Part shown: positions 16,602 to 62,680 of the stretch, one piece after another
How positions within the stretch are numbered: position 1 is the first letter of the stretch
Layout of the letters: every line of letters begins with the position of its first letter
DNA from: Eutreptiella sp. 'Long Island Sound 2002'
Taxonomy: Eukaryota > Protista > Euglenida
Reading direction: 5' to 3'
Length of the DNA stretch: 64,000 bases
Assembly (NCBI GenBank): GCA_964036045.1
Contig: OZ038378.1
Coordinates: 129,146,001 to 129,210,000, forward strand
Notes under the pieces: generated by a model
What the model was told of the DNA's origin: nothing
Database searches by the model: none
What the model saw: the letters and a program-made list of their open reading frames with translations, nothing else
Program-made: the position numbers and the translations under genes

Positions 16602-16621
16602 TGTGTGGGGTGCCGCTGCGG

Positions 16622-18014: not shown

Positions 18015-20591
18015 TGACGCGTATCCCATGCCCTCCCCCCTCAATGGCTTTGTCTTTCATGGTATCTAACCCAATCTGCTTCCTGGTCTTATGCCGTGTG
18101 CCACTGTGCAGCCATTCAGCCGACAGTTTCTGTTTGTATTAATTTCATGCAATTTCGGGCATAGAAATTCAGGAATTTTATTATGGAATTGCTTCTTAGT
18201 CAAGGGGATAGATATTGATGCCCTCCAGAAAATCTATTGAGGCCTGTCCGCGCGCGCGTGCTCGCCTGGTGCTCCGGTTGTGTGCGCGTGCTCCCTGCTG
18301 CTCGGCCGGTGCTTTAATGCAGGCCGAGTGACTGAAAGCTCTTCTGAACGGGTGCTAATAGTGTTAGCTCTATCCTGTTACCGAAATGAATACCGGCCAG
18401 AAGCTAGGGTGACTCCAGTGGAAGATGGGAGGCCCGGGGTCAAAGATCTGGCTGGAGCCTGGTGTGGTTCGATCTGCCCACACCGGCGGTTGGTCAACGA
18501 CTGGTACACGTTAATGGGCGCATCTGCTTCGGCAGTGCCACACCTACGTGTATGGGGGATCACGAGTACCTGGAAGCTGGAGGAGTCCTAGTGGAAGAGG
18601 GGTGGAAGTGGAAGTGGCTGAGGTAGAAGCACTGGAACAGAAGAAAGTACATCGTTCGTTGCTCCGCAATCCGCAAGTGAACTCTTCTTCTTCTTCTTGT
18701 GCTTTGGTTTGTCAGTTTTCCACGTCCCTCGGTTGAGTTCCTCACCCAACTTCTTTATCCTATGTTGCAATGGACATTGTTTTCTTTGAATACTCACAAG
18801 TGTATGAATCATTGAACTCACTGTTTTGTACATTAGCTCCATTCATGCTTTGTGTTCATTACAGGAAGGTCAACAAGCATGCTTGAGTGTTGGACGAATG
18901 TCTCTTTTGATGATGCAATACATTTGGTTGCATGGTCACAGTCATTCATCTTATTAATTCAAGTGACCTTTGCAAGTGTGGTGCTACGGTGCTTGGTCAG
19001 GTTCACTTCAGCATGTCATGTGTTGGTTCATTGCTTGTTTGTTGATAAAGATCATTGAGTCGCGATTGCTTTCTTCCTGGATTTTGTGCCAATTGCCTCT
19101 AAGGAGATTGCCCAAGTTTTTTGCTACTCTTGATGAGGAGGTAATTTTGTGAAGTGCTTTGAGGAGAATGTTTTGGAGCATCCTTTGCACTTTGTGTCCA
19201 TTTGAGATCCGTATCTCCCTAACCGCATGCCTTTTCAAGAAGCAGGTGGATTCTTTGCAATCAGGTTGAACCCTGTGAGAGTGTAGACTAAGGGTTTGCC
19301 TTCGGTACAACACGTCAAGGGTATCTTCTCTTGGAAGCCGGTTGGAGATGTGGTCTGCCCATGTTGTAGTCAGATTCTTCGTTCCTTTGACCGTTGCCGT
19401 GTGGTTGACCAAGCGCCCAACTTTCCCTCAGGGTCGAGGTCGCGTCTCTAACTGAGGTGAACTTGGGACCCTCCCTCTCCATATGGGGTGCAAGGCAATC
19501 GGCTCTCTCCTTCCAAGTGGTTAGGCAACCTCCTCTCCTCTTGGAATAGGGACCCTCCCCTCTCCTCTGGGGAAAGGGACACTCTCTTCTTCGGATAGGG
19601 TTACTCTCCTCTCCTCTTGGGATAGGGACATCCTACTCCGGCCAGGGATAGTGATTCTCTTCTCCACCCGGGATAGGGACATTGTCCTCTCCCCGTTGGA
19701 TAGAGACTCTCTTGTCTCCCTGTGACAGGGACTCCATGGATGTGCTCTCATTGGACCCGGGATATCTCTCTTTGTGCACTCACTCTGCGGGCCGGGTGTA
19801 GGTCTCTACATGTGACCCGGGGCATTTGCTTATCCAATTCTCCTACCCAATCTCTCTCCAAGTGCATGCTCTCATGCGTCATCGTTAGGCAAAATCCTCT
19901 TTCCATACACATGCTCTCCTGGATTGGGTTATGCGAAGGTCGAGCTGTTCGGGGCATGGATTGGTGAAGGTCTCTCCTAGGGCAATATATATGTGCCCTC
20001 ATGAGGCGGGACTCCCTCTCTTCGGGATAGGACAATCTCCCCATGCATATACTTTCACGGTTGTTCGAGTATACATTCTCTGGGGATTTGGTTGGGGAAT
20101 GGAGGTGCCATGGGATGAGATTGGGAGGTATTGGGGAACCAGGTCCGTGTGGGACTAGGAAGAAACCCCGGAGGATCTCTTGGTTGTTGCTGCATTGTTT
20201 TGGGATGCTTTGGTGTGATCAAGTATAATCTTTCCATCTCCGTCCATGCATTGAGCACGTGGGATTCCAGGTCTCCCGAGGGTATGAGATCAATTAATTT
20301 TTGAGGTCATGTTCTCCATGGTTGCATGTGCATGCTCGCGGATGACCATGACCTTCAAGACCATTGAAAGGTTGAGCATTTTCGTTTTAGCTAAATATCG
20401 CTGACTGCTTTGTATGTCATTGGGTTTTGGTGTACATACTTTTGTCTTCTTTTATGTTAGGCGGCAAAGGTTGTACGTTTGTTTATGTATTGCTGCAAAG
20501 CGGTCAAGATGTGGATTCTGATTGACTGTCAATGCTTTGATTTTGTGCAGCCGCGTGCCTAGGGAAGGACCACCCCCTAGGACACTCCTCA
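18015..20591 (+). repeat. 5' LTR of element B (~2.58 kb)
   Basis: Homologous to 31903-33090 + 40909-42337 and to 8369-10710; TG...CA ends. Confidence 0.9.
19530..19730. repeat. Degenerate short repeats inside the LTR (ctctcctc / ttgggatagggac modules); also at ~9885-10085 and ~41235-41435
   Basis: Recurrent GGGATAGGGAC and CTCTCCTC blocks at ~20-30-bp spacing in all three LTR copies. Confidence 0.7.
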
Positions 20592-20603
20592 AAACCAACG
20601 TAC
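20592..20603 (+). promoter_or_regulatory. Primer-binding-site position; not a tRNA-type PBS, candidate self-priming site
   Basis: AAACCAACGTAC abuts the LTR end and lacks a TGG start. Its reverse complement GTACGTTGGTTT matches GTACGTTTGTTT at 20473-20484 (11/12). Confidence 0.45.
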
Positions 20604-20909
20604 CCGACGTGAACGCGTTCAATGCCGTCGGTGGTGAACAACTCGTTGAGTAACGAGTACTCGGTTGCTGGGCATAGGGCTCGGGACCGTTGCGGTACGG
20701 CCTCTGCGCCGCCGTGCTGTCGAGAAGATGGTGCCTGTTGTCTGACGAGGACACCGTCTACACCACCGGGCAAGTGAGTGCATCTCCTTGCTGGCGTCCT
20801 CTGCCTCAACAGCACACCCTTCTGTTTCTCCCGTGGTCAGAGATCAAGGCTTTCCGCGCCTGCACCTAGACTTCTCTAGGTACGAGTCCAAGAACTCCTC
20901 CGAGACGCC

Positions 20910-23900
20910 ATGGTCAATTGGCAGCAAGAGGGCAAGACCTAGACAAGGCCCCATCCCCTTGCGGTAGGATTACTGCAAGGGCTGATATGGGAGCAGCATT
21001 ACCGCCACTCCATCCCCCAATGTGAGGGCGGTTTCCCCGAAACCTTCGAGTTGAGGGAAGACTTGGGGGCCGATCGCCTGCAAACCCTTGCAAATTGGCT
21101 GCAGGTGGAAGGTTATGGCTACCGTTTCCGCCAAAGAAGGTGGCGGGTATGGAGGCTGAACCCCAGGGCCGGGGAAGGGCTGTGCCCGGATGCGTATGAG
21201 GACGAGGTCCACGACAACGAGTATAGGCCCGGCCAAAGGATCAACGTTTCCATTTTGGACGTGATCGAAAAAGAGTTCCGCGAACCAGGACAAGAACGCA
21301 AACTGCGTAAGTCACCCTCGGATAAGAAGCGGTCATCCGGGGACAAAAAGCGGGACAAGAAATGGAAAGAGCTCCAAGAACACCCAGCTGCCCAGGCTAG
21401 AGCGCTAGTTCCCATCTGTGCAGCCACAACACCAGACTGCCCGCGCTCCCCAGCTACCCCAGGCAAGGATGCCATGGGTGATGTGCACCTGGGCACGCCC
21501 GAAGCTCACTCAGCCCTTGCCGCATCATCCTCATCAACGGCTGCCGCTTCATCCTCACCACAGGCCCGTGAACCCACCGTCTGGAGCGCCCGATCAATTC
21601 CCCATGTCAAAGAATGCGGGAAAAGGGCAGAAGAATGCGAGAGGTGCACTGGGCGCCCTTGCCATCTCCAGGAACGGCAACGCCTCCTCGTGAAACAACG
21701 AGAAGAACGAAAGAGGTGTACCTTCAAAGTGATGACGGAACGCCAAAGGGGCTTGGAAGCCTGGCGACGTGGGATTGAGGAGATCCACGCGCAAGAAGTG
21801 GCGCAAAGAGCCGAGGCCCTCAACGCCGAGCTGGTGCGGGAGATCGAAGAGCAAGAAGCGGAGAAAGAAGAAGCGGAACAAGCGGCAAGGATAGCAGCAG
21901 CACGGGGTTCCGAAAGGGAACAAGGGGCGGACGCAGGCCACCACTTGGATGTGGAATTACTGAAGCACCCACTTCGTGATCTGGCTGAAGAATATGGGCG
22001 TCGATTCTCATCAGCCTCAGATCCACCGGCCACAGCTCCTGAGGACAACATGACCCTCGACGACAATGAGTCAAGAGTTGGAGCACCGTGAGCGATGAAA
22101 GAAGCAAGGGGAAGAACAAAGGGAGGAACAAGGGGAACATGCGCGCCAAGCTCCAACAGTCCGAGGAGGAGTACTACACGATGTGTGAGGGTCAGGACTT
22201 CTCTGACTTCCGGGGTCGACCTGAGGTCATCGTGAGCGCTGTGGCGGCAGAAGGTCAACCCCCAAGCGATCTTAGCTCGGATGGGAGTTCGTTGGACTCC
22301 ACGGGTGGACGACCGAAAAGATTGCCTCCAAGAGGATCGCAAAGCCACTCCGACGAGTCTGATGACAGCGTGCGTATCCGAGTGCTTCCCGGACACCCGC
22401 GCGCGGAGCGACTAGATCAAGAACAATTACACAATCGAAAGTCCCAAGGGTTCATCGAGCGATGGTCAGCCATTGTTCGGATCAAAGAAAGAGTGGAAGA
22501 GTTGGAGAAGGTCATCAAGAAGCTGGAGAAGGAAGCGGCCATCGCCAAGCAAGAGGTGGTCCGACTCACTGGTGTGGTAGGTGAAGCCCCAAAAACCAGC
22601 ACACAAGCAGTGGAAGAATCGAAGCGCCACGCGCAAGGCGCCACCTCGCTGCAAGATTGCCTCGATGCGCTCACCTCCGAAAGACTAGAGGAGCATGGCG
22701 AAGTGCGTGAACCCCGCCAACAAGCAACACCACACCGCGGAGATGTTAAGCCCGCAGCGCCGTCGGGATCCGTACCGACAGCGGGAGAGATGGAATTATC
22801 CGTCACAAACGCTCCCGATGACCAAGAGTCTGGGATCTCCCAGTCCAGTGCCGCACCCTTTGCAAGGTCTGGAAGAGTGTCAAGTACACCTCCAAGAGCG
22901 CCACCTCCGAGAGGATACCAAGCTGTGCCGCCGGCCGCTGGCTATCAATGGGTTCGCGTCCAAGGCAAATGGCAGCGAGAGAGACTGCTGAGGATACAAG
23001 AACCCCAAGGAAATCCACGGTCGGCGAACCGTAATGAAGAGTTGCAGCGGTATAGACTGGAAGAAGAAGACGATGACATCGACGTTAGCGACTGCAGTCA
23101 GGTAAGCTTGGAGGACATGATGGACCAAGAGTTCGAAGGTCTCGCGCCTCCCTACACCGAGCTCGAAGAGGAGCGGGACATGGCCCACGACATGAACATT
23201 CATGCCGTGGGAACCCAAGCCGCGTATGGAAGAGACCGTGAACGATACGGCCCTCGACGCGATTGGGAGCTCCGAGGTTGAGTGTCAATATTGGCAGGCA
23301 GCTGACCGGGAGCCGCTGAATTAGAGGACAACGGTGATTTGGTTCCTCCTCGTTACAGCGGTGATCCGCTCACTCTCGACCACTTCTTCCGGGCATTGGA
23401 TATTTTTGTCCTGCAGCTATCTGTTGGGATGGCGAGGTCAGACCGAGAGGAATATCTTTTCAAACGGTTTTGTTACCGCCTCCAAAAGGCCTTGCAGACT
23501 TTAAACTTGCAAGATTTGGCCTATGGAAAAATCAAGTGCTACAAGCAAGCCAAGAAGTGGCTCGAGCGGGAAAAAGGAGTCGACAATCAGGAACAAGCGT
23601 CCAAGCTATCGAAAGCTGTCACTCTCGTACACAACGGGAATAAAATCTTCCTATACGACTGGCGGGATTTCCAGCGAGAATACTACCTCAAACGCTCAAA
23701 GGTAGAGGACTGGAATGAAAACGATGAATGCCGGTGTATCATGAACCTCTTCCCTTCCTTGTGGCGGAAAACAATTGTGAAGGAAGGGCACAGGCTGGCG
23801 AAGAATTCGTATACTGCGAAAATGATGGTACCAAGTACAGTTCACCGGAAAATCAAGGAGTGGGTCCGCAAGAAGGTAACCGCCAACGCAGTGTTCCAAA

Positions 23901-25159
23901 GCTTGCAGAACGCACTCCTCGTGACGGTTGACACCGAACGTGAGCGCTTGGACAAATTTTCGATGGACTGCCACACTCTCAACCTGCAACAGGTCCCTCG
24001 CCGCATGACGACCAACGAAGTATTTGAATTTGTTGGGGAAGAAGTGCGCAAAGAAAACAAGGCGCATCATCAAGGCCGTGCCGTGGCATCGGCAGAACAA
24101 AACATGCGAAGACAACAACACATGGGTAAGGCCCATTGGCTGTCAAAGCCTACCCTAGTGGGGGGGCTGTCACTCTCCACTCCCGGCACTACACGACCCC
24201 AAAAACAGGGGTCTAGTGCCTACTCTCCATCCTCCCTGAATAGGTCAACTCAACTCCCTTGGGGCAGTCGACAGGACCACCACATTACGGTAGGGGGGGG
24301 GGTCCCGGGTGCCGATAAGACTTAGGCCCCAGATATTCTGTCGAAAAGGCGGTAAATTCGTATATCACCCATACCACCTCAGGATCCCAAACTCAAAAGG
24401 TAATAAGGGTAGTTTGGGGTAGCCAAGACCTCCATTCTGACACGCGTGAATTGGCAGGACCCAACTGCACACAGGCTCTGAGATGTAGCATGGGAGGCAG
24501 GGCAAGAAAACAAAAAAACCGAAAATCAGAAGTTACCCATTTCAACACACTCTCCCGCCAAGGCAAGAAGGACTCAAAGGATTCCATGTGGGCACATTCA
24601 ATTGGCATCGGCAGGATGTCCATTGGCGTGAGTCGAAGGATGCGGCTATGGTGATGAGAGGCCGCTCGATTCTGAAGGCCCTGCTTTGACTTCCGTCCCT
24701 GCCGCTGGTGCCAAGGACTCCTTTGTTGCCCACAACCTCTCCAACCAAGGGAAAGATCGCAGCAAATGGCAACCCGTCAACCGCAAGCAGCAGAAGGAAC
24801 CCCGACGTGTAGGGTCGCCAGCCCTTACTCTCAAGGAGTACATCACCAAGTACCGCAAGGGGTGTTTTGTGTTTTATGGGCGCAACCAAGCGCATGACCA
24901 TGTGCACAAGACTTGCAATGGGTACGCTGAAGGCAAGGCCGCCTTTGCACAAGCGAACCTGGACCGCAAGCTCAAGAGCGAGGGTCAGCGTCCCCAAGGG
25001 ATCCATGAAGTTCAAGCTGAACTCCAAAAGTTGGTAGGTCTTAAGGAGTCGCTCGAGAAGATGCTGACATCGGAGAAGAGTCCAAAAGAGGGTATGCCTC
25101 AAGCGGCGTTGCCCTCAACAGCCGCTCATTCGCGGGGCCCCTGCAGCCAAGGGCCATAG
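20910..25159 (+). pseudogene. gag: gag region of element B: long low-complexity/coiled-coil N-terminal part, capsid-like domain (23339-24095) and C-terminal zinc-knuckle-like motif; interrupted at 24096-24602
   Basis: VPPRYSGDPLTLDHFFRALDIF...; GCFVFYGRNQAHDHVHKTC (~24860-24920); lies between LTR and protease; multiple frameshifts and stops. Confidence 0.7.
24096..24602. other. 507-bp copy of internal H sequence inserted in gag with a 12-bp TSD
   Basis: TGGCATCGGCAG at 24084-24095 and 24603-24614. The insert corresponds to H ~7806-8313, and both of its ends are internal to H. Confidence 0.85.
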
Positions 25160-31902: not shown

Positions 31903-33879
31903 TCGACGCGTATCCCATGGCCTCCCTCCTCAATTGCTCTGTGTTTCATGGTATTTAACCCGATCTGCTTCCTGGTTTTATGCTGCGTGCCACTTGCAGC
32001 CAATCAGCCGACAGTTTCTGTTTGTATTAATTTTTTGCAATTTTGGGCATAGAATTTCAGGAATTTTGTTATGGAATTGCTCATTAGTCAACAGGATAGA
32101 TATTGATGCCCTCCAGAAATTCAGTCGCGGCCTGTCCGCGCGCGCGTGCTCGCCTGGTGCTCCGGTTGTGTGCACGTGCTCCCTGCTGCTCGGCCGGTGC
32201 TTTAATGCGGGCCGAGCGACTGAAAGCTCTTCTGAACGGGTGCTAATAGTGTTCGCTCTATCCTGTTACCGAAATGGATACGTATCGGAATCTAGGGTAA
32301 CTCCAGTTGAAGATAGAGGGCCTGGGGTTGAGGATTCGGCTACACTCTGGTGTGGTTCGATCTGCCCACACCGGCGGTCGGTCACCGACTGGTACACGTT
32401 AATGGGCGCATCTGCTTCGGCAGTGCCAAGCCTACGTGTATGCGGGATCACGAGTCCCTGGAAGCTGGAGGAGTCCTAGTGGAAGAGGGGTGGAAGTGGA
32501 AGTGGCTGAGGTAGACGCACCAGAACAGAAGAAAGTACGTCATTCGTTGCTCCGCAATCCGCAAGTGAACTCTTCTTTTTCTTATTGTGCTTTGGTTTGT
32601 CACTTTTCCACGTCCCTCCGTTGAGTTCCTCACCAACTTATGTATCCTATGGTGCAACAGACATTATTTTCTTTGAATACTCACAAGTGTATGAATCATT
32701 CAACTCACTGTTTTGTACATTAGCTCCATTCATGCTTTGTGTTCATTACAGGAATGTCAACAAGCATGCTTGAGTGTTGAACAATTGTGTCTTTTGATGA
32801 TGCAACACATTTGGTTGCATCGTCACACGCATTCATTCAATTCATTCAAGTGACCTTTGCAAGTGTGGTGCTACAGTGCTTGGTCAGGTTCACTTCAGCA
32901 TGTCGTGTGTTGGTTCATTGCTTGTTTGTTGATAAAGATAATTGAGTCGCGATTGCTTTCTTTCTGGACTTTGTGCCCATTGCCTCTAAGGAGATTGCCC
33001 AATTTTTTTTCTATTCGTGATGAGGAGGTAAATTTGTGAAGTGCTTTGAGGTGAATGCTTTGGAGTATCCTTTGCACTTTGTGTCCATTTCTTAGCCCAC
33101 GGAAACTGAACACTGTTTTGCGCGCCGAACGCGCAGAAAATGACCAGTTCGCAACAGGGCAAAAAACTATTTTTTTGGATGTTTGATGAACGTGATTTTA
33201 GACGTAGTGAAATAAATTGCTTTTTCAGTGTTGTGCAACTTCGTGTTCCTCAATGTGACGTTTTTTACATTTCTCTGGCGTTCTGAGTGCGCGAGGCCTT
33301 GTGCCCTCAAGATATCCAAGGTAGAGTTTATCAGGAAACCTAAAAACCCGTAAGGACTGGCGTTTGCGGAAATACGCAGCTCGCACACGGTATTAAAAGT
33401 AGGATTGCGTTGCCCAAGGAGCATTTGAAGTGTATGACTGTCGGACTTCCCATGTTAGGGGAAACACGTGTACTGTAAAGTTAAAATGAAATACAAAGTT
33501 AGGCATCTGGAGTGTGCGAGGCCTCGCGCACTCAGGTCACGTTATGCATTGAATTTGCAGAATGGATATAACGCATACAATTGCAGGTACAGTACCAGAC
33601 GGACAAACACATTTGATTTTTCCGGTAGATGTTTCTGTAGACACCATGTTGGTCAGATATACCACGGTATAGAACATTGTCCCACGGAAACAATCAGTAC
33701 GCGAGGCCTCGCGCACTTAAACGACAAAAGAAAATGAAAAAGCAGGCAGGTCAGGCTACGCCGGTATTTACATTCCGTTTCAAGGCTACCACCTGTGACA
33801 GTCGATTATACATCGGTAACCTTCGTCATTTTCTTCAGGGCATCAGGGGAATGATTTGCTTTTTTCCAACAGCAATTCA

Positions 33880-36168
33880 ATGGCAGACGTGTCCAGTTCT
33901 AATGGCGGCCGTAGCCTTCGCTGCCCGATAAATACGTTTTTTTTTCCAACTGTGTTTAAAGACGGAAACAGAATAGGAAATTGTGGTTGCGAAAACAGTT
34001 TTCGGCTACTGGGAACAGAGCGCACGCAGACACCAACTACAATTTGCGGTGGCAGCACGCGCACCAGAAATGACGACAGGAGAAGGCCAGATGTTTTCAA
34101 ACACACTTTTGTAAAAGATCGCTGTGCGAAACGACAACCAAAATATGTGCTCAAATTTAATTCCACGGAGAAAAACGTAAAATGCCACTTCAAGCCAGAA
34201 AACTCTGTAACGCATCAGATGATAGCAGAAGTAAGCAAACGAGCAGCAGCACTACGAGAGGCATGCGCGGCAGAACCAACATACCAAACAGCAGACGGTC
34301 TGTGGAAAGGACTCGAACGAAACGACCTGGCGGCGCAACTGGTGTTAACATTTGCACAGCGACTCAGGTTCAACAAAAGAACGCGCCACAGTTTACAAGC
34401 AGCTAAAAGGCAGGAGGACAAGCGCTGGGTGCGCATTTTGCGACGGGAGGGCTGGAACCTGTACCTGTTGATGCGTCAACGGGCAGTACCAAACAGGAAA
34501 AAACAAGGAAACACAACAGGGTACCTAACGCAAACAGAAAGAAGAACAAAAGTGCGACTTGGGCAAGCAGATGCTGCCGCAGATACAGTGGACGAACAGG
34601 CAGCAGCAGCCTTTAAAGCAACGTGGTCCCTGGTGCTTTCGTCGTGTTGCGTGCTGTGGAAGGAGAACTGGTACCGGGCACAATACACGACACACCCAGA
34701 CGAAAGTGACCGTTCGCAAAACTGTACTGCAATGGCAGTACTTCAACTGAAACAGAGGCCCGCGTATTGGGCAGGACATCCAGCCTTTGAGGACCTTGCA
34801 GCACGGATAACGACAGTCGCAAGGGCTCTGCAACAGCGTGAACGAAGAATCCCCGAGACTTTGCGTGACCTGGGGTATGCAGATCGGTGTGCACCAGACA
34901 CCGGAAACGTGAGAGCACCGTTGGATGTGAGGAGGGATGCAAGGACTGTGCAGGCACCAGTGTGGCGCCCGTTTGCCCTGTCAAAAGAAAAGGTAACTGG
35001 TGGTGTTGGTCTGTTCAACTTGTTACACTTTGCAAAGGACAACAAACAAACAGAGTTCTACCGCTGTTGGTTGACCAAAACATACACTACAGGATACTAA
35101 AGTTGTTGTATGGTGCCAAGAACCAACGATGAATCATGCGTGCTTACCTGCGATACCTGTAGTTTACGATGTCTGCCATGCCTACAGGTTTGTTGTTACT
35201 CATACTTTTCGGGTGTTCCGGCCTTTTTTAACCTACCTACGGGAAGGTCTGCTGCGACCTGGTTCCACCATGCTATCATACCCCAAACTGATAGTTATGA
35301 AAAAGACTATTGCCGCGCTGATGCTTGCCACACCGCGAATACTACGCCCGTATAGGCGCAAAGCACAAGCTGCAACCGCGATCAGTGGTCGTGACACTGC
35401 GCATGCAAACAGGGCAGCAGTGGCAAACGCAGTCTTGCATTTGTTGTCGGAATGGTGCCCGTTGTTGTTGTACTTGGGCCACGTGGTAGGGGAATGCAAC
35501 TGGTCGGGGGAAAACAAAGCTACAGGGTCACGAGCTCAGGAGGTGTTGCAGTAGAGATTGTGTCTGTTGCGGAGGCTGCGTCGAGGACCGTGTGACACCG
35601 TACTGAAGTACGAACGCACAATCATCTGCACATTGCTGTACCACAGCAAGTGGCACCAGGACCTGCCCAGTCAGGCACACTCAGAGGAGTTTGGAGAAGG
35701 GATGTTGAGCAAGCTGGTGCGGGACAAGGCGAGAAACACCGGTTCTGTTACTGTTGAGGAGGTGGAAAACCATTACTTGTTACTAAAGGTTGGTCCTGGT
35801 GGAAAACACGTGGGGATGCAAAACGTTCCCAAGAACCTTGTACACAGGATGCGACAACGACTGACGGGACTTTTGCGACAGACCAGATTTGCATGGCCTA
35901 TGTGGAATGGGAGTCGGACAGGGTCAGCACGGTTGCATCTTCGTGGCCGCGAAGGTTACCGAGATTTCGATTCTCACCTACACAACCCCTTTATTACGAC
36001 CACTACCGGCTACTTGGTCACAGCGTACTAGATGCCCTCATTGACCAGAAGCCAAATCCCACCAACCAACTGGGACGGAAGCTGAATGCCGTTGTGGGGC
36101 GGAGAACAGACATGGATACCGACTGACAGGAAGCAGCAACACGCAACGTGCGGCAACGCTTGCGGTAA
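33880..36168 (+). pseudogene. Putative DDE transposase (Academ/DUF6589-like by motif), ~760 aa, disrupted by frameshifts and stops
   Basis: Chain of ORFs 33856-35100, 34887-35132, 35129-35554, 35558-36031, 35893-36126. Motifs VLWKENWYR...NCTAMAVLQ, LPLLVDQNIHYRILK, PVVYDVCHAY, SEEFGEGMLSKL; N-terminal Cys/His cluster; first long ORF inside the TIRs; pyrimidine-AG acceptor (33872) just before ATG 33880. Confidence 0.6.
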
Positions 36169-36417
36169 CTGACACCCACAGTGCGCGAGGCCTTGCGCAC
36201 TAAACGTTACGAAAAAGAGGTATGTAATGCGATGTGAGTGCGCGAGGCCTCGCGCATTGATTAGTTCGCTAAGTGCCGTGGATTAAGTCACAACAAAGAC
36301 GGTTGTGGGACAGATTTGCGGGAACGACCTGCAAAATACCGCTTCGACTGATTTCAGAGTTCAAATGACCGTGTTTCATGTCATGGCATTTGCCCTTTTC
36401 AGGTTTTTTTTGGCACC

Positions 36418-39400
36418 ATGAGTGAACCAGGGTCGCCAGAACGTCCAACACCAGACGCAGAGGCCATGGAGTTGTCACCAGTGACCGACCAAGGGGACAC
36501 GCCGAAGAAAGGACGCAAAAAGAAGGGTGAGAAGAAGCCAATACCGGAGATGAAGCTCACAGTCGACGTGCCACAGTGGCTGCGGCAGGAGAATGGTAAA
36601 GCCGTGAAGGTAAATATTGCCGATTTGAGAATTGACAAGACCAAGGAGCGCGGACAGATCCGATCCATCAACTATGACGACGTTGCCAGGAACGTGACGG
36701 GATACCAAGCACTGCCACCAGCTGGACCGTTGCCCTTAACGGCGTGGGAGGATAGTGGTGTGACTCGCTTCGCGTTCGATCGAAGACGTTTCTTCTCTTT
36801 GCTTCGGTACATGATTTGCTTTGCAGATTGCTCACTTTACGTTCTGAATGGTCAACATGGCACAGAAACATGCAGAAAGATTCAGGAACTGCGTCTCGCA
36901 GAAAGCAAAGAATTGGAGGACTGGCAGGAGTTTTGCTACGTTGACATTCTGAAGTACGAGACGCCTTGAAGGATCCGGGCCAAAGTTGCAGGATTGCAAC
37001 AAGCTGGCAGCCAGTCTGTGACGTGGATTCCGCTGTCTGAGGCGCTGGACAACAGGTTGTTGTACATTGACAACCAGAAGCAGGAAAAAGAGCCACAAGA
37101 TTTCGAGCGGTTCAAGATTGCTGTTGTCCAGGCTGCCGTCAACTCTGCGTTGCTTGCATCCGAGGCTTTGGAGGAAGCAGGACACACAGTATGTATTCGT
37201 GTATCGCACGGGTACAGTGCGCGACGCCTCGCGCACTCCATGACACTATTTTCCCTCGCAGGACTTGACATTCATTAACTGGAGAGACATCTTCTCCCTG
37301 GCGTATTACTGCGGCCGTGAGGCGGTTACTGGCATGAAGGACCTCAAGACTAAGAACAGGAAAGAGGAAGTTACAAGGAATGCCTTCAGGAAGCTGGAGG
37401 GGCTGCATCTACCGAGCTTATTGCGGGAAGTCTGTGCGCACATGAAAGTGAAGGACTCGACCTTACGCACCACCCAGAACTACATTGACGCGCAGATTAC
37501 AGATCAATGGGTTATTTTCCATCTTGACCATCCGGACAATAAGCAGTATGTCAACCAGACCGCAGGTATGCGTCAGTGTTGCAGATTCAGTGCGCGAGGG
37601 TTCGCGCACTCAACCACCTTTTTCACATCCGTACAGCTGCCGATGCGAAGATCCGAGCAGAAGTCCCAGCACTGGGCACGGCGCAACTGAAAATTGGGCT
37701 GGGAAATTGGGGTTTTTGGGAGGACGCAAAAAGTACGAAGGATGGGTCGCCGTGGCCAAAATGGAAGACGTTGACCAGTGCACCCCTGTGGCAGACTGGG
37801 GACAAGGGCGCACCTCCATTACTGCAGACGCTGGCCGTGCGGAAACAACTGCAAAGGAAGACTGAGGCACCATCATTGGCACCGTCACAGACACAGCTGA
37901 GTACTGGCAATGTGATTAATGTCTCCAAGCAGGACGAGCAAGGGAGCAAATTTGCTTTGACGGCCTGCCGTGTTGAGGATGTTGATAAGACACCGCCAGC
38001 CCGTTTCCGGGATCTGCGGTACCCGTTGTGGGTCATCAACGCTGACCTTTTCGTTGAATATGACTCTGCAGGATTTGTTCCGAAGTGGCTGTTCGATGTG
38101 ATGATGCTGGGGAAAGACGTCATTTTCTATGGCGAGGCTGATGTTGTGCATCGTGGGCGGGCAGCCGGGGGAGGGGGAGCGCATGACCCCAGACGCCCCT
38201 CGCAACGGTAGAAGGCACCCCCCCCCGGGGACGCCCTGCCGCCACCCCCACAACCCCAAGCCAAGTAGGGGGGAACCAGGACCGGACCGTCCCCCCCCAA
38301 GCACGCCAGACGGAGCAAGGGACCGGGGCAGGACACGCGGAGGGGCACGGACCACGTGGAACGGCCCTACCAGCGCCCAGTGCCGGGACCACGCGAGGTG
38401 CGCACGCCACACCACCCAGGGGGGGGGGAGCGGACACCGCGAGGGCGCGAGCGCACACACACGAAAGGGACATGCGGGGACTACCAGAAGGGCAACCGGA
38501 CCGAGCGCGTGGAACGCACAGACCGCGTGGAATGGCGTACGAGCGAGCGAGGGTAAGGGACACCCGGACGGGACGGCCCGCCACACGCAGCGCGGAACAC
38601 GCGGGGCGGGGAGGGGGAAACGAGAGAGACACAACACCAGGTACCGGCCCAAACCCCCCGAACCGGCCGCGAGCGCCGCGCACACACAGACGGGGCACTG
38701 CACCCGCCAAGGCAGTAGTGGCGCACAGCGCCACGCCCCAACCTATAGGCTAGCTAGCCTCCGTGCAAGCCCAAGGGGATCCCTATGGCGACAAGCCAGT
38801 AGCACGGGCCCGGCGGCGCCGGCCCCCCGGGCGACCACGCATTAGGGGGGCGACGCAGTGGGTAAGCGCCCGCAGCCACGGCTGCGAATTGATGCACAGA
38901 CTGGGGAGTGGCGAAACGGGGAAGCCGGGGAAGGACGGGGCTCCGAGCTCTGTGAACCCGGGGGACTCCGCCACCAGGCAGGAGGTGCGTCTTGGAGGGC
39001 CCCCCACTAGGACCCGGTGGGGAGGATATCACCTGGCCCAACCAGGTGGCCCCCCGGGGCCGAAAGGCGTCTAGTACCCGCAAAATCAAATCTCAAACCT
39101 CAAACCTGATGTTGTGCACCGTATTGGCCGCGACATGCATAGGCTCTGGCGTATGGAGAAGGACAAGGATTCAACCACAGTGCCATTCTAACATGTTCGG
39201 TTGCCGGTATACTCTTGGTTATCGGGTCCCGTGACCAGCAGTACGTATCAGTCCGACGAGCACTATATGTGGAAGGGAACAACGAGTCGCTGGAATAAGC
39301 AAGTACATCTGCTTCAATCGCCTGTTACGAAGACGTCGCATGCGCGACGCCTCGCGCACTGCTGCCCCCGTTTTTCGTCTTTATTCATCACATTTACAGT

Positions 39401-40340
39401 TGCCGAACTATGTGTCGTATTCCGCTGGACATTTCAAAGAGATGCAGAACAAGAACCTCGGTGGTTTCATGCCTCTGATTCACGTGCTGTGGTACCGGGA
39501 CATATATATTTTAAGCAGTGGGTATGCTGATGCACTGGTTGTTGTGGACGACACGCCTGCCATGGCCGCAAAGATTGCGATGTCCGACGTCTGAACCAAA
39601 ATGGCGTTTCTGGCTGTGTCAGCGATCACGCAAAAGGACCTTGGGAATGCCGTTGGAGGTGCTCTGCAGCATGCAATCATCATGCCGTACATGTTGGAGG
39701 CTGATCAGACAGAGCAGGGAGCAACAGCTGCAACTTGGGATGCTCAAGAAGAGTGGCTTCAGCGTGGCGTTCCAGTGTGGGTTTTGGACAGCAACCGAGG
39801 GCATGAAGGGCAACAGCAGGTGCATGCTGCAGAAGGCGTCCAGGAAGATGTTGTGACTGAGGCCCCCGCTGACGACACTGAGCCTGTTGCGCCTGCATGT
39901 ACCCTGCCAATGCAAGCCAAGGTGAAGAAGACTGCCAAAGTTATACCAACTCAGGGTACTGCAGCCGGAAAGGGAACCCCCTGGAGTAGCAAGAAGCAGG
40001 CAAAAGTAAAAGGAAAGGAATCGGACAAGCCCGCGGAATCAGACAACGAGGATGCCGACGAGGAGGAGGAAGAAGAGGATCCAGAGCAAGTACTGGAGAC
40101 CCAGCAGAAGCGCAAGCGGGCACCCGCCGCTCACTTCGATGCAAGCCCCGAATCTGGTAAGGAACACCCAAAGAAGGAAGCGAAGACTGCTGCCAGTGTT
40201 AGTGCAGAGTTCAAGCCGCCCTCGCGTTCTGGTGCCCAGCTGTCTAGTGGTACCGTTGCCTCTCGAAGTGGGACAAGTGCGGTGGCAAGAAGCCTGGGTT
40301 CCAGGTTTGCTAAGGTTGCTGGACCGAAGAAGAAATATGT
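36418..40340 (+). pseudogene. Spliced cargo gene (~880 aa): ParB/Srx-like N-terminal domain, possible methyltransferase-like middle region, acidic/basic low-complexity tail. Exons 36418-36757, 36827-37188, 37262-37565, 37637-39302 (interrupted), 39400-~40340
   Basis: Four GT-AG introns (36758-36826, 37189-37261, 37566-37636, 39303-39399) whose removal keeps frame at every junction. GQIRSI...PPAGPLPLTAWEDSDCSLYVLNGQH motif; in-frame stops at 36967, 39189 and 39592. The 3' end is uncertain. Confidence 0.75.
38155..39105 (+). mobile_element. 5'-truncated non-LTR-type fragment with (CTCAAAC)n-like tail, inserted in exon 4 of the cargo gene
   Basis: TSD CTGATGTTGTGCAyCGT at 38138-38154 and 39106-39122; tail caaaatcaaatctcaaacctcaaac; removal restores the frame (EADVVHR|IGRDMH); inverted homologue at 62681-63600. 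Confidence 0.9.
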
Positions 40341-42337
40341 CACCATTAACCCAAGTGTTTCGCCTCTTTTTGCAGTCATGTGTGCGCGAGGCCTCGCGCA
40401 CTCGCCTTCGACGCGAATGCAATTATATGCCCTTAAGGGCTTGTACATTTTTGCCGAGCTTTTATTTCAGTGTTTGTACGTTGTGCACTTCCTGTCCTGT
40501 TTTTGTTGCCTTCTGTACACAATCGGTTCCATGACCTTGAGTGCGCGAGGCCTCGCGCACTCAGGTACACAAAAAAGCAATTTATTTCGCAGGACAAACA
40601 TAGGTGCAAGTGGACACCCGCAGAATGTCATTTTTGAAAATGAGCTCCCGAACAGGCACGCACCAGTTGGGTTTTGAAATACAATAACAACAAGATTGGT
40701 AAAACACACCCTTCAAATCTGAAAATATAATAGCTTATTTTAATAAACAAAAAGTGGAAAAAAGCAGCAAATTGTGTAAAATTGTATTTCTTTGGGTGGT
40801 ATCTGGGTCATGTGTGCTGCAAATGTCCAAAAAAAATATTTTTTGGGCAGTCATTTTTTAGATCCTTCTCTTCCAAAAGGGGGTGCAGTTTGCGTGGGCT
40901 AAGCATTTGATTGCCGTATCTCCCTAACCTCATGTCTTTCCAAGAAGTAGGTCGATTCTGTGCAATCAGTTTGAACCATGTGAGAGTGTAGACTAATGGT
41001 TTGCTTTCGGTACAACATGTCAAGGGTATCTTCTAGTGGAAGCTGGTGGGAGATGTGGTCTGCTCATGGTGTAGTCAGATTCTTGGTTCATTTGACCCTT
41101 GCCGTGTGCTTGACCAAGCGCCTGCCTTTCCCTCAGAGTCGACGTCACGTCTCCAACTCAGGTGAGCTTGGGACCATCCCTCTCCATGTGGGGTGCAAGG
41201 CAATCGGCTCTCTCCTTCAAAGTGCTTAGGCAACCTCCTCTCCTCTTGGGATAGGGACCCTCTCCTCTCCTCTTGGGAAAGGGACACTCTCTTCTTGGGA
41301 TAGGGATACTCTCCTCTCCTCTTTGGATAGGGACATTCTACTTCCCCCACGGATAGTGATTCTCTTCTCCACCCGGGATAGGGACATTCTCCTCTCCCCA
41401 TCGGATAGGGACTCTCTTCTCTCCTTGGGACAGAACTCCATGGATGTGCTCTGATTGGACCCGGGATATCTCTCCTTGTGCACTCACTCTGCAGGCCGGG
41501 TCTAGGTCTCTACATGTGACCCGGGGCATTTGCTTATCCAATTCTCTTACCCAATCCCTCTCCAAGTGCATGCGTGCTCTCATGGGTCATGGTCAGGCGA
41601 AATCCTCTTTCCATACACATGCTCTCCTCGATTGGGTTATGGGAAGGTGCAGCTCTTCAGGGCATGGATTGGTGAAGGTCTCTCCTAGGGCAATATATAT
41701 GTGCTCTCTTGAGGCGGGACTCCCTCTCTTCGGGATAGGACAATCTCCCCATGGATATACTCTCACGGTTGTTCGAGTATACATTCTCTTTGGATTTGGT
41801 TGGGGAATGGAGGTGCCATGGGATGAGGTTGAGAGGTATTGGGGAACCAGGTCCGTGTGGGACTAGGGAGGAAACCCCGGAAGATCTCTTGGTTGTTGAT
41901 CCATGTTTTTCGGATGCTTTGGTGTGATCAAGTATAATCTTTCCCTCTCCGTCCATCCATTGAGCACCTGGGTTGCATGTGCATGCTCGCCGGTGAGTGC
42001 ATTTCATGTCTCGCGATTGCTTTGCCATTGACCTCAAGGGTTGGTGAATCATGTGAGGTTAATTCTCCTTTGCCATGTTCCATGAGGATGACCATGACCT
42101 TCAAGACCATTGAGAGGTTGAGCATTTTGGTTTTAGCTAATTATCGCTGACTGCTTTGTATGTCATTTGATTTTGGTGTACATACTCTTATCTTCTTTCA
42201 TGTTAAGCGGCAAAGGTTGTACGTTTGTTTGTGTATTGCTGGCAAGCGGTCAAGATGTGGATTTTGATTGATTTTCAATGCTTTGATTTTGTGCAGCCGC
42301 GTGCCTAGGGAAGGACCACCCCCTAGGACACTCGTCA

Positions 42338-43179
42338 ATACCATGCCACTGTCACAAGTCTGGTAGGCTGCGAACTTTGGTGAAATTCCCCTAACTGAGA
42401 AACAAGGGAGAAAACAATGCAAATAAGTCCCACATAGGGTTAGCCTAGGTCCAGGGAAGTGCAGGCACAAAGGATCTGTGAAAGATGTGGTTGTCCTAGA
42501 AGGCCTGGCGCTACCTCCCCCTCAGGTTGGAACAAGGCAACCAACTTCAATACCCAATTTTTGGGATCATTTTTTAGGGACCACAAAAAGGGCTTAGGCA
42601 TAAGTTCCTGAGTCAGATTTGAAGTTCAAATTGAGGTGACATATCAGCTTGGTCCGATCCCATAAGGGTGAGCTCTAACCCAAACTCCTCAAATATGAGC
42701 AGTCGACACTGATGATAGGCCATTAGTGAAATATTGGCCCAAATCCAGAAGATGGCCTAACGTTTGCATGGTCTAGAAGTGACCTGATGAAATTTGGAAA
42801 TTTGCAACAAAATTCGAGAGAAAATTGAAAACAGTGAGCCCATGTACTACTAACCCTCCAATGAAATGCTCAGTACAAACTAGAGAGCACAATTGAAACA
42901 TATGAAAAGACCCCAAGGTGCAACTCCTCATGAGTTCTTTACTGTTTACCCGCCAACTGACTACGTGACAGGGTGGTTTTCAGTGTCCATAATGTACATC
43001 TCTGGGACCATGTAAAACCACTATCCTATACACTTGGCCGACTTGGTTCCAATGGATTGGATACGTGATAGAACACACAAATACAAGTTCATCTACCCAA
43101 CGTCGAAAGATTGGGGACGTGTTTGGTCAAAGAACAAGGAGATTTGGCCCAGAGACCCAAAGTAACCAAGTGGGTGAAG
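42338..43179 (-). repeat. Repeat H copy 1, middle piece
   Basis: Colinear with ~57657-58495. Confidence 0.85.
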
Positions 43180-62420: not shown

Positions 62421-62680
62421 TAAGCAGGGCACCAAGTCGAACTCAAATACACAATTCCGGGACCAAAACCTTGTACCGAAGACATCGAAGCATCGTACAT
62501 ACTTCAATGCACAGCTATGTCGCTCATCGATCTTTCATGTCAGCTGCTGCGATGTCGCGCCTGTTCAATGGGTGATCGCCCGTTCGCACGCTCCCTGCTT
62601 TGTGGCTGCTCCAAACCATAACAAACAATCGTGTAGATGTGTATGACGCGAAATGGAGTTGTCATGGAGGGCAGTTTTCA

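What the first reader, a model, noticed from the sequence alone, without database searches (positions are those of the whole stretch)
33286..40563. Ten copies of one 22-bp palindrome across a transposon that encodes a ParB-like protein: a possible parS/ParB-like system in a eukaryotic mobile element
Seen: AGTGCGCGAGGCCTCGCGCACT occurs at 33286, 33511, 33696 (left subterminus), 36180, 36237 (between the genes), 37216, 37589, 39339 (mid-intron in introns 2, 3 and 4 of the cargo gene) and 40381, 40540 (right subterminus). A variant TGCGCG-N5-CGCGCA lies at 33119-33135 next to the left TIR. I noticed none outside the element. The TGCGCG/CGCGCA arms are well kept while the central 6 bp vary (AGGCCT, ACGCCT, AGGGTT). 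Established: bacterial ParB dimers load on dispersed 16-bp palindromic parS sites; TIR transposons usually confine transposase-binding repeats to their ends. Inference: retention inside separate ~70-100-nt introns implies selection on the motif itself. It could be a DNA site for the ParB-like protein (loading, spreading, end synapsis or self-marking), or an RNA hairpin that controls splicing.
Basis: partly seen in the sequence, partly recalled or inferred. Interest (0 to 1): 0.9.

Follow-up and report, generated by a model that had tools for sequence, protein, structure and literature searches.

The report
Conserved palindromes in ParB-like transposon
A 7.8-kb cut-and-paste transposon of an unidentified eukaryote carries ten copies of one palindrome, and related elements keep the same kind of palindrome at the same places (ends, between the genes, inside introns or even coding sequence) next to a conserved second gene with a ParB-like fold, so the palindrome is very probably a selected DNA site for an element-encoded protein.

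Summary
Ten copies of AGTGCGCGAGGCCTCGCGCACT (0-3 mismatches) lie at the stated coordinates, none elsewhere in the window, and none is expected by chance.

The element is a real TIR transposon, 33091-40903. It has a 5-bp target duplication (CATTT), and two uninterrupted copies of its insertion site lie in the same window. It carries two decayed genes:
- Gene 1 is a 650-665 aa putative transposase with no detectable homologue.
- Gene 2 is a five-exon gene of about 885 aa. Its N-terminal domain is ParB/sulfiredoxin-like by predicted structure only, not by sequence.

The main new result is comparative. Four related lineages share only 27-44% protein identity and no alignable non-coding DNA. All keep the two-gene layout and a palindrome with a CGCGAG-type arm:
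- at conserved distances from the ends (first site 193-196 bp from the left end);
- between the genes;
- mid-intron in gene 2, or inside coding sequence in a lineage where that gene has no intron.

One lineage carries a symmetric G-to-C / C-to-G change in both arms. This shows selection on the motif as a sequence-specific, two-fold symmetric DNA site. It argues against a splicing hairpin.

Which protein binds the site is untested. The ParB-like protein is the best candidate. ParB-domain accessory genes with nearby inverted repeats have already been reported in algal transposons, so this is a new variant of a known kind.

The parts
33086..33090 (.). Left copy of the 5-bp target site duplication (CATTT)
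   Evidence: Self-blastn shows two uninterrupted copies of the host repeat. Their alignments to the two flanks overlap by 5 bp (9553-9557 and 19199-19203). Sequence read.
33091..33108 (+). Left terminal inverted repeat, CTTAGCCCACGGAAACTG
   Evidence: Inverted repeat I3. The same terminus occurs in L001 and L003. The CTTAG terminus is shared with lineages B and C.
33119..33135 (.). Variant palindrome TGCGCG-N5-CGCGCA next to the left TIR
   Evidence: Read. Present in L001, slightly changed in L003, absent from the right end and from lineage B.
33286..33307 (.). Palindrome 1, left subterminal (3 mismatches, decayed). It starts 195 bp from the left end.
   Evidence: The offset is 195/196 in A, 195 in three B copies and 193 in C.
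33511..33532 (.). Palindrome 2, left subterminal (offset 420)
   Evidence: Lineage B has its second site at offset 423.
33696..33717 (.). Palindrome 3, left subterminal (offset 605)
   Evidence: Lineage C has a site at offset 603.
34182..36168 (+). Gene 1, putative transposase, pseudogene. It is intronless in intact copies (653-665 aa).
   Evidence: tblastn of the intact paralogue P0006 shows four pieces in different frames plus stops. About 90 paralogous fragments exist. Candidate acidic triad: WIDNWY, VDENIHY, EEFGEG. No Pfam, NCBIfam, PDB or Foldseek match.
36180..36201 (.). Palindrome 4, intergenic (first of a pair 57 bp apart)
   Evidence: An equivalent pair lies 55 bp apart in B (L004 9766/9821). 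Lineage C has three intergenic sites.
36237..36258 (.). Palindrome 5, intergenic, about 160 bp upstream of the gene 2 ATG
36418..40338 (+). Gene 2, ParB/Srx-fold accessory protein. Five exons, about 885 aa, pseudogene. In-frame stops at 36967, about 39190 and 39594. The natural stop codon is mutated at 40336-40338.
   Evidence: Gene model. L003 is intact across exons 4-5. 30% identity over 686 aa to the lineage B protein, with all four intron positions shared. AF2 and Foldseek for the N-terminal domain.
36758..36826 (+). Intron 1 (69 nt). No palindrome in lineage A. The homologous intron in lineage B has one.
37189..37261 (+). Intron 2 (73 nt), carrying palindrome 6 at 37216-37237
   Evidence: Core 17/18 identical to the lineage B intron 2 site. 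Flanks 15/30 and 10/23.
37566..37636 (+). Intron 3 (71 nt), carrying palindrome 7 at 37589-37610
   Evidence: Lineage E intron 3 also carries a related palindrome.
38155..39105 (.). Nested insertion of an unrelated G+C-rich repeat in exon 4, flanked by a 16-17 bp target duplication. Not part of the element.
   Evidence: Absent from L003, where the flanking alignments overlap by 17 bp. Another copy lies at 62672-63606 on the minus strand. The duplicated TGATGTTGTGCA is at 38139 and 39107.
39303..39399 (+). Intron 4 (97 nt), carrying palindrome 8 at 39339-39360
   Evidence: Core 16/18 identical to lineage B intron 4. Lineage E intron 4 also has a site.
40381..40402 (.). Palindrome 9, right subterminal (ends 501 bp from the right end)
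40540..40561 (.). Palindrome 10, right subterminal. Perfect, with arms extended to about 13 bp. It ends 342 bp from the right end.
   Evidence: The distance is 342 in L003 and 345 in lineage B.
40886..40903 (-). Right terminal inverted repeat (CAGTTTGCGTGGGCTAAG on the + strand)
40904..40908 (.). Right copy of the target site duplication (CATTT)

Best explanation
The palindrome is a cis-acting DNA site recognised sequence-specifically by a two-fold symmetric (dimeric) protein that the element itself encodes. The most likely binder is the ParB/Srx-fold product of gene 2.

Gene 2 is not cargo. It is an obligatory second gene of a previously uncharacterised two-gene TIR transposon group.

Proposed working:
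- The gene-1 protein recognises the CTTAG...AAACTG termini.
- The gene-2 protein binds the palindromes.
- The sites at fixed distances from each end help build or regulate the end complex.
- The intergenic and intragenic sites give the same protein access to both promoters and to the body of the element, for autoregulation, bridging or marking of 'self' DNA.
- Introns hold the internal sites because they are the only sequence inside gene 2 that is free of coding constraint. Where no intron is available, the site is written into a variable coding loop.

Shown here: the sites, their confinement to the element, their conservation and covariation, the fixed geometry, the co-inheritance of both genes, and the ParB/Srx-like predicted fold.

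Inferred: binding itself, the identity of the binder, and what binding achieves.
For: 1. Enrichment and confinement.
- Ten sites lie in the element and none is expected.
- There are no core matches (up to 3 mismatches) in 132 kb of sequence outside elements.
- Only three single-copy hits occur in all of IMG/VR.

2. Selection.
- Lineages A and B share no blastn-detectable DNA. Their gene-2 proteins are 30% identical.
- Even so, 12 of the 14 shared 14-mers come from the palindrome.
- Homologous introns keep 16-17 of 18 core bases, against 33-50% identity in their flanks (random expectation 44%).

3. Depth.
- Lineage C (JGI metagenomes, gene 1 36% identical) has 9 sites of TCCGCG-N6-CGCGGA and none expected.
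- Lineage E (marine metagenomes) has ACACCGCGAGGCCTCGCCGTGT mid-intron in introns 3 and 4.

4. Sequence-specific and symmetric.
- All sites within a lineage share the same arm sequence rather than merely being self-complementary.
- Between A/B and C, position 4 and its mirror position change together (G..C to C..G). The central 2-6 bp vary freely.

5. Not tied to introns or to RNA. One lineage C site is a 30-nt perfect palindrome inside the gene-1 ORF.

6. Fixed geometry.
- The first site starts 193-196 bp from the left end in A, B and C.
- The second site starts at 420-423 in A and B.
- The last site ends 342-345 bp from the right end in A and B.

7. Candidate binder.
- The gene-2 N-terminal domain model has pLDDT above 90 over residues 50-170.
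- All top PDB matches are ParB-family DNA-site binders or sulfiredoxin: Noc 7nfu, KorB 8qa9, ParB 7bm8/6sdk/6t1f. The alignments run 150-190 columns, beyond the roughly 100-residue Srx core.
- Gene 2 follows gene 1 in lineages A, B, C and E.

8. The TIR sequence differs from the palindrome, so two DNA specificities are needed and two conserved proteins are available (inference). En/Spm TnpA and the PIF/Harbinger Myb-like protein are precedents for an accessory protein that binds subterminal repeats (own knowledge).

9. ParB-domain accessory proteins with adjacent inverted repeats have been proposed to bind their own transposon in red algae (bioRxiv 10.1101/2025.02.11.637652; see also PMC12477816).
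Against: - No binding data exist.
- Nothing found here separates gene 2 from gene 1 as the binder. Both are co-inherited with the sites in every lineage seen.
- ParB membership rests on a predicted structure with modest Foldseek scores (E about 1e-3, TM 0.3-0.56).
- Sequence methods find nothing. hhalign against P1 ParB gives 0.1% probability.
- The ParB CTP motif GERRxR is replaced by (S/N)GQH-x with no conserved arginines.
- A helix-turn-helix after the N-domain was not demonstrated.
- Lineages A and B live in one genome and share the same 18-bp core. A host factor could explain that equally well.
- The L006 fragment of lineage E shows no clear site in its intergenic region or in intron 2.
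Confidence: 0.47

Rival explanations
1. The palindromes are binding sites of the gene-1 protein (the putative transposase). This would resemble the subterminal repeats of Ac, P or Mutator elements. The internal copies would act as enhancers or as titrating, autoinhibitory sites.
For: - The outermost sites keep fixed distances to both termini across lineages A, B and C. That is what one expects of parts of a transposition complex.
- Gene 1 is always present with the sites.
- The N-terminal 150 residues of gene 1 are predicted helical and could hold a DNA-binding domain.
Against: - The termini (CTTAG...AAACTG) are unrelated to the palindrome, so the transposase would need two specificities.
- Known transposase-binding repeats are confined to the ends (own knowledge). 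Here the intergenic, intronic and coding-sequence sites are also conserved.
- Gene 1 could not even be confirmed as a transposase. Foldseek's best E-value is 0.3.
Confidence: 0.2
2. The sites are bound by a host protein, or act through their CpG content. They could be a host transcription factor or insulator site, or a nucleation or avoidance point for DNA methylation that the element exploits for expression or to escape silencing.
For: - Lineages A and B, with 30-44% protein identity, keep the identical 18-bp core within one genome.
- Each site holds four CpGs.
- 10 of the 29 substitutions in the 28 lineage A sites are transitions at CpG positions. Those positions make up only 8 of the 22 bases.
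Against: - The motif was not seen once in 132 kb of surrounding host and other repeat DNA. A host regulatory site should also occur elsewhere.
- The fixed distances to the element ends are hard to explain by a host promoter factor.
Confidence: 0.13
3. The palindromes act as RNA hairpins in the pre-mRNA and untranslated regions, controlling splicing, export or stability.
For: - Each site folds into a 7-13 bp stem with a 4-nt loop, -9 to -22 kcal/mol for the intact copies.
- In introns the site sits between the 5' splice site and the likely branch point.
- Changes between lineages are compensatory.
Against: - Arm sequence, not just pairing, is identical at all sites of a lineage.
- Sites also lie in subterminal DNA at fixed distances from the ends, and one lies inside a coding exon of gene 1 in lineage C.
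- Intron 1 of lineage A and intron 3 of lineage B carry no recognisable site, yet their positions are kept in both lineages.
- Rfam finds no known RNA family.
Confidence: 0.07
4. The palindrome is a selfish or neutral micro-element. It would be spread within the family by insertion or gene conversion and would have no function for the transposon.
For: There is turnover. Intron 1 has a site only in B, and intron 3 only in A and E. So sites can be gained or lost.
Against: - No copies occur outside the family.
- The sites have no flanking duplications or termini of their own.
- Positions and distances are conserved across lineages that share no other non-coding sequence.
- A site embedded in frame in a coding sequence is not what random insertion gives.
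Confidence: 0.05

Closest known systems
ParB-domain accessory genes of algal giant transposons: PAG3 of Plavaka elements in Bostrychia and Chondrus, and the ParB + DNA methyltransferase gene of Sola1 in Ectocarpus
   Same: A eukaryotic DNA transposon encodes, besides the transposase, a protein with an N-terminal ParB-like domain. Inverted repeats lie next to the gene. The authors proposed that the protein binds its own transposon.
   Different: - Those proteins carry a recognisable enzymatic domain (2OG oxygenase, N6/N4 methyltransferase, SET). Here Pfam and NCBIfam find no domain at all.
- Those elements are giant Plavaka, Mutator or Sola1 elements. This one is 5.9-7 kb, has a 5-bp target duplication and has a gene-1 protein with no detectable superfamily.
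- Their repeats are tandem arrays beside the gene. Here single palindromes are dispersed at fixed positions, including in introns and coding sequence.
KorB with its OB sites on plasmid RK2, and Noc with its NBS sites in Bacillus (ParB-family proteins with dispersed palindromic sites)
   Same: - A ParB-family fold. KorB 8qa9 and Noc 7nfu are among the top three structural matches.
- Many copies of one 13-18 bp palindrome are scattered over the replicon or element. Some are at promoters and some inside or between genes (own knowledge for KorB and Noc).
   Different: - Those are bacterial, CTP-dependent clamps with the GERRxR motif, which is absent here.
- There is no ParA or KorA partner gene in this element.
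- This system would act on chromatin in a eukaryotic nucleus.
- Binding is untested here.
Two-component TIR transposons with an accessory DNA-binding protein: En/Spm TnpA with its 12-bp subterminal motifs, and the PIF/Harbinger Myb-like ORF1 protein
   Same: There are two conserved genes. One protein is presumed to cut, and the other is presumed to bind repeated subterminal motifs at both ends that are distinct from the TIR. The geometry relative to the ends is fixed (own knowledge for En/Spm and Harbinger).
   Different: - No sequence relation to TnpA or to Myb/SANT.
- 5-bp instead of 3-bp target duplication.
- The sites are perfect palindromes, and they also occur internally under selection.
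hAT, Transib and other DDE cut-and-paste transposases
   Same: - TIRs and a short target duplication (Transib also makes 5 bp; own knowledge).
- Predicted beta-strands end in conserved acidic residues, followed by a long all-helical insertion before a conserved glutamate.
- The Hermes transposase appears among the weak structural matches.
   Different: No significant match by Pfam, a PDB profile search or Foldseek. The CTTAG termini fit neither the hAT nor the Transib consensus. Superfamily membership therefore cannot be claimed.

Membership tests
ParB/Srx superfamily (fold level) | N-terminal ParB/sulfiredoxin-type alpha/beta domain | tested here: met
   The AF2 model was built on the intron-free homologue P0137 with 16 relatives. 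Residues 50-170 have pLDDT above 90. The top 50 Foldseek PDB hits are almost all ParB, Noc, KorB, PadC, pNOB8 ParB-N, sulfiredoxin, SbnI or the serine kinase SerK. E-values are 1e-3 to 5e-2 and the probability is about 1. This rests on a predicted structure, not on the window copy itself.
ParB family (sequence level, Pfam ParBc) | Significant profile match to ParB N-terminal domain models or to solved ParB sequences | tested here: not met
   There are no ParB-family hits in Pfam, NCBIfam or the PDB profile search. The only listed hits are weak and unrelated, all below cut-off. No annotated relative appears among 5.8 billion proteins. hhalign against phage P1 ParB gives 0.1% probability.
ParB CTPase clamps (ParB, Noc, KorB) | Arginine-rich CTP-binding motif GERRxR(A) with the box I and box III residues | tested here: not met
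   Alignments A2 and A3 show a conserved GQ(I/V)R and an (S/N)GQH-x in the equivalent strand-loop position. The paired arginines are absent. The motif is nearer to the DGQHR / GCHR type (own knowledge).
ParB CTPase clamps (ParB, Noc, KorB) | Helix-turn-helix DNA-binding domain after the N-domain, and a dimerisation domain | tested here: inconclusive
   The model has four helices after the N-domain (160-225, pLDDT 59-85). Foldseek alignments to ParB, Noc and KorB lacking their C-terminal domains span 150-190 columns. No residue-level alignment to an HTH could be inspected. The full-length spliced protein could not be folded.
ParABS partition systems | Partner ParA ATPase gene | tested here: not met
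   The element holds only two genes. Neither has a P-loop or ParA hit.
parS / OB / NBS-type sites | A 13-18 bp palindrome, in several copies, specific to the replicon that encodes the binding protein | tested here: met
parS / OB / NBS-type sites | Direct binding by the encoded ParB-family protein | not testable with these tools
   Needs EMSA, DAP-seq or ChIP.
TIR cut-and-paste DNA transposons | Terminal inverted repeats, a target site duplication, empty sites and multiple copies | tested here: met
   - An 18-bp TIR with one mismatch.
- 5-bp duplications: CATTT (window), CGCAT (L003) and ATTGT (L005).
- Two empty paralogous sites in the window.
- About 90 paralogous gene-1 fragments.

TIR cut-and-paste DNA transposons | DDE/RNase H-fold transposase of a named superfamily | tested here: inconclusive
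   Conserved D161, D300/E301 and a glutamate in helix 506-517 sit on a beta-beta-beta-alpha-beta topology. The model is only moderate (pLDDT 64.6). Foldseek, Pfam, NCBIfam and the PDB profile search give no significant match.
Algal ParB-domain transposon accessory genes (PAG3, ParB-MTase) | ParB-like N-terminus fused to a DNA- or chromatin-modifying domain (2OG oxygenase, N6/N4 methyltransferase) | tested here: not met
   No Pfam or NCBIfam domain was found in exons 3-5 of intact copies. A fold-level test of that region was not possible.
Introner-like or MITE-like mobile palindromes | Copies dispersed in unrelated host introns or genes, with their own insertion signatures | tested here: not met
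   None in 132 kb outside elements. Intron flanks are unrelated apart from splice signals. The whole host genome could not be scanned.

The most novel reading that the evidence does not exclude
This may be a previously unrecognised superfamily of eukaryotic cut-and-paste transposons whose obligatory second protein is a ParB-type site-loading protein. In this reading it loads at about ten palindromes spread over the element, coats or bridges the whole element in chromatin, and so marks 'self' DNA for end pairing, autoregulation or protection from silencing. That would be a eukaryotic counterpart of the KorB/OB or ParB/parS systems. Protein and site would co-evolve so tightly that sites are forced into introns and even into coding sequence.
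Probability: 0.2. Interest if true: 0.9.

Novelty: new variant of a known kind. Interest (0 to 1): 0.7.

Why it matters
ParB-family proteins are a standard example of bacterial DNA segregation and long-range repression from dispersed palindromic sites. Whether eukaryotic mobile elements use the same logic is only now being raised, from algal genome annotations.

This family offers a compact case of 6-7 kb that can be tested:
- two 'dark' proteins;
- one well-defined site;
- natural specificity variants (TGCGCGAG, TCCGCGAG, ACCGCGAG arms) that allow swap experiments;
- conserved site-to-end distances that predict a defined nucleoprotein architecture.

It also shows how a cis-acting DNA requirement can shape gene structure. 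Introns are kept as carriers of binding sites, and where no intron is available the site is written into a coding loop. If gene 1 is confirmed as a transposase, the group may add a new superfamily to the catalogue of eukaryotic DNA transposons.

Tried and rejected
- **Domain and sequence searches.** Pfam on all ORF pieces of both genes and on intact paralogues gave no significant hit. NCBIfam gave none either. PDB profile searches for both proteins gave nothing meaningful.
- **Gene 1 structure.** Foldseek on the gene-1 model found no significant match, so its transposase identity stays inferential.
- **Sequence link to ParB.** hhalign of the gene-2 N-domain profile against phage P1 ParB gave 0.1% probability. 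The RK2 record for KorB was not in the plasmid collection.
- **Homologue searches.** The representative-library search and the profile search returned only unannotated fragments.
- **Locus searches.** The search for related loci with the gene-2 alignment failed because it had no conserved stretch. With the gene-1 alignment it found one metagenome locus, and none in GTDB genomes or IMG/VR.
- **Other scans.** Rfam on the window found no family. A literature search for the assembly accession found nothing, so the host organism remains unidentified. Pfam on other large ORFs of the window found nothing.
- **Rejected: chance.** No matches occurred in the shuffles.
- **Rejected: a genome-wide micro-element.** None was seen in 132 kb of flanking sequence.
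- **Rejected: a splicing-specific hairpin.** Sites also lie in a coding exon and in subterminal DNA.
- **Not possible here.** The spliced full-length gene-2 protein could not be passed to the tools by reference, so it was neither folded nor searched.

Full report
**1. The observation**

There are none elsewhere in the 64-kb window, and none in 100 dinucleotide-preserving shuffles. Searching the arms alone (TGCGCG-N6-CGCGCA, up to 1 mismatch) recovers nine of them. It adds one chance-level match at 46753. The variant with a 5-nt centre at 33119-33135 is present.

**2. What the surrounding element is**

Self-comparison of the window shows that the sequence on either side of the element belongs to a host repeat. 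That repeat occurs uninterrupted at 7817-10714 and at 17475-20360. The two flanks (31905-33090 and 40904-41972) align to these copies with a 5-bp overlap.

This fixes the element at 33091-40903 (7813 bp):
- The target duplication is CATTT.
- The termini are CTTAGCCCACGGAAACTG and its near-perfect inverse.
- A full copy elsewhere in the same assembly (L003, 6857 bp) has the same termini and a different 5-bp duplication, CGCAT.

That copy also shows that window positions about 38155-39105 are a later nested insertion of an unrelated G+C-rich repeat with a 16-17 bp duplication.

The family is multi-copy. About 90 paralogous gene-1 fragments of 75-92% identity come from one ENA assembly, ERZ25074135. 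That assembly also holds chromovirus-type LTR elements. The organism could not be identified.

**3. The two genes**

*Gene 1 (34182-36168)* is intronless in intact copies, at 653-665 aa. In the window it is broken by at least four frame changes and by stops.
- It has conserved acidic residues in WIDNWY, VDENIHY and EEFGEG.
- In a moderate AF2 model (pLDDT 64.6) these sit at the ends of beta-strands and in a later helix, as in DDE enzymes.
- Pfam, NCBIfam, PDB profile searches and Foldseek give no significant match.
- 'Transposase' is therefore an inference from context.

*Gene 2 (36418-40338)* has five exons. Removing four GT-AG introns (69, 73, 71 and 97 nt) and the nested insertion yields one frame of about 885 codons with three stops and no frameshift. 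Exons 4-5 are intact in L003.

Gene 2 gives no hit in sequence searches. An AF2 model was built on an intron-free homologue (P0137) with 16 relatives. It is confident over the N-terminal domain, with pLDDT above 90 for residues 50-170. All its best PDB matches are ParB-superfamily members: Noc, KorB, chromosomal ParB, PadC, pNOB8 ParB-N and sulfiredoxin. The E-values are modest, about 1e-3.

The ParB CTP motif GERRxR is not present. The family has GQ(I/V)R and (S/N)GQH instead. hhalign against P1 ParB is negative. 'ParB-like' therefore holds at fold level only.

**4. Comparative evidence on the palindrome**

Lineage A is the window's own family (window, L001, L003).

*Lineage B* (L002, L004, L005, L010) is from the same assembly.
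- It is 42-44% identical to A in gene 1 and 30% in gene 2 over 686 aa, with all four intron positions shared.
- It has no blastn-detectable DNA similarity to lineage A.
- Its complete element (L005 7325-13254) has CTTAG... termini and a 5-bp duplication, ATTGT.
- It carries the identical 18-bp core TGCGCGAGGCCTCGCGCA, but with TT..AA flanks in place of AG..CT.
- The sites sit in the left subterminal region (three), between the genes (two), in introns 1, 2 and 4, and in the right subterminal region (two).
- Of the fourteen 14-mers that A and B share, twelve come from the palindrome.
- In homologous introns 2 and 4 the core is 17/18 and 16/18 identical. The intron flanks are 33-50% identical, against a random expectation of 44%.

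*Lineage C* (L008, L009) is from JGI metagenomes. Its gene 1 is 36% identical to A.
- It has the terminus CTTAGAGGGCCAAACTG and nine copies of AGTCCGCG-N6-CGCGGACT, with none expected.
- Five sites are left subterminal and three are intergenic.
- One site is a 30-nt perfect palindrome inside the gene-1 reading frame, in a loop that varies between lineages.
- The start of gene 2 follows.
- Relative to A and B, the fourth base and its mirror partner have changed together.

*Lineage E* (L006, L012) is from marine metagenomes.
- It has ACACCGCGAGGCCTCGCCGTGT mid-intron in introns 3 and 4 of gene 2.
- A decayed copy lies upstream of the gene 2 ATG.

*Lineage D* is tentative (L007, L011). It repeats GCAACACGCGTGTTGC, including inside both reading frames.

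No relatives were found in prokaryotic genomes or in IMG/VR.

**5. Geometry**

| Feature | Lineage A | Lineage B | Lineage C |
|---|---|---|---|
| First palindrome starts, bp from the left terminus | 195-196 | 195 (three copies) | 193 |
| Second palindrome starts | 420-422 | 423 | not compared |
| Last palindrome ends, bp from the right terminus | 342 | 345 | right end not recovered |

The intervening sequences are not alignable between lineages, so the spacing itself is conserved.

**6. Interpretation**

Several findings together show purifying selection on a sequence-specific, two-fold symmetric DNA site:
- The sites are confined to the element. None occurs in 132 kb outside elements. All of IMG/VR holds only three single-copy hits.
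- The arm sequence is identical at every site of a lineage.
- The centre varies freely.
- The arms show a symmetric change between lineages.
- The distances to the ends are conserved.
- The sites persist in introns, or in coding sequence where no intron is available.

An RNA hairpin that controls splicing does not explain the subterminal geometry or the exon-embedded site. A mobile micro-palindrome does not explain the confinement or the positional conservation.

The termini are unrelated to the palindrome, so two DNA specificities are needed. Two conserved proteins are available. By analogy with En/Spm TnpA and the Harbinger Myb-like protein (own knowledge), and given the ParB-like fold, I assign the palindrome to the gene-2 protein with moderate confidence (0.47). 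The gene-1 protein (0.2) and a host factor (0.13) remain open. What binding achieves is inference. End-complex assembly, autoregulation of the two promoters, and bridging or marking of the element are all possible.

**7. Relation to what is known**

ParB-domain accessory genes have been described in algal transposons:
- In Ectocarpus, a Sola1 element carries a ParB domain plus a methyltransferase (PMC12477816).
- In Bostrychia and Chondrus, Plavaka PAG3 carries a ParB domain plus a 2OG oxygenase. Adjacent tandem inverted repeats were proposed as its binding sites (bioRxiv 10.1101/2025.02.11.637652).
- ParB-HTH fusions to adenine methylases occur in chlorophytes (PMC4738411).

The present family differs in four ways:
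- The element is small.
- Neither protein has a recognisable enzymatic or transposase domain.
- The target duplication is 5 bp.
- The sites are single palindromes at fixed, dispersed positions.

I therefore rate it a new variant of a known kind. It is not already known and it is not categorically new.

**8. Caveats**

- The window copy is a decayed pseudogene copy.
- The structural inference was made on homologues, not on the window sequence.
- The host genome could not be scanned as a whole.
- Lineages C, D and E are known only from short metagenomic contigs.
- Binding was not and cannot be tested here.

Noticed in passing
window 38155-39105; also 62672-63606 (minus strand) and L001 16750-17698: A G+C-rich repeat of about 950 bp is inserted into exon 4 of gene 2, with a 16-17 bp target duplication (TGATGTTGTGCAYCGT). 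Its end is a short CAAAT/CTCAAAC-type repeat tail, which suggests a non-LTR retroposon or SINE-like element. About 81-83% identical copies lie elsewhere in the window, and a 94% identical copy lies in another locus.
   Followed up: partly
window 7473-14124, 17475-24609, 31905-33090 + 40904-42343: A large host repeat is present in three copies in the window (91-96% identical). It contains a 22/27/49-bp tandem array (CTCTCCTCTTGGGATAGGGACA...). Its long ORFs (for example 21051-24325) have no Pfam match. One copy is the insertion target of the element, and the other two serve as empty sites.
   Followed up: partly
window 14704-16837: A 65-bp satellite (29 copies, 94% matches) is followed by a 62-bp repeat (3.5 copies). 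It lies in a 63-67% G+C stretch with strong AT skew.
   Followed up: no
window 33135-33147 and 40847-40860; L005 about 7370-7380: A second short motif, AAAATGAC(C/A)G, lies about 45-55 bp inside both ends of lineage A and inside the left end of lineage B. It may be part of an extended terminal binding region distinct from the palindrome.
   Followed up: no
L007 39-54 and 764-779; L011 1332-1347: Two short metagenomic contigs carry distant homologues of gene 2 and gene 1. They share a different palindrome, GCAACACGCGTGTTGC (perfect in L011, 14/16 twice in L007). Two of the three copies lie inside reading frames. This may be a further lineage with its own site.
   Followed up: partly
L009 2968-2985 (= L008 1601-1618): In lineage C a perfect 30-nt palindrome containing the site lies in frame inside gene 1. 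It encodes ...KSAGGRGLL... in a loop that differs between lineages. The homologous stretch of the window copy (about 35575-35600) shows only a vague resemblance to the lineage A palindrome.
   Followed up: partly
window palindromes and L001/L003 copies: Of the 29 substitutions in the 28 lineage A sites, 10 are transitions at CpG positions (C5, G8, C15, G16, C17). Those positions make up 8 of the 22 bases. This would fit cytosine methylation of decaying copies in this genome.
   Followed up: partly
L005 10296-10367 and 10730-10800: Introns 1 and 2 of the lineage B gene resemble each other beyond the palindrome on the 3' side (CATG(G)ACCT(T)GTC...CAG). In several introns the site is followed directly by a branch-point-like UGAC/UAAC. 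No explanation was tested.
   Followed up: no
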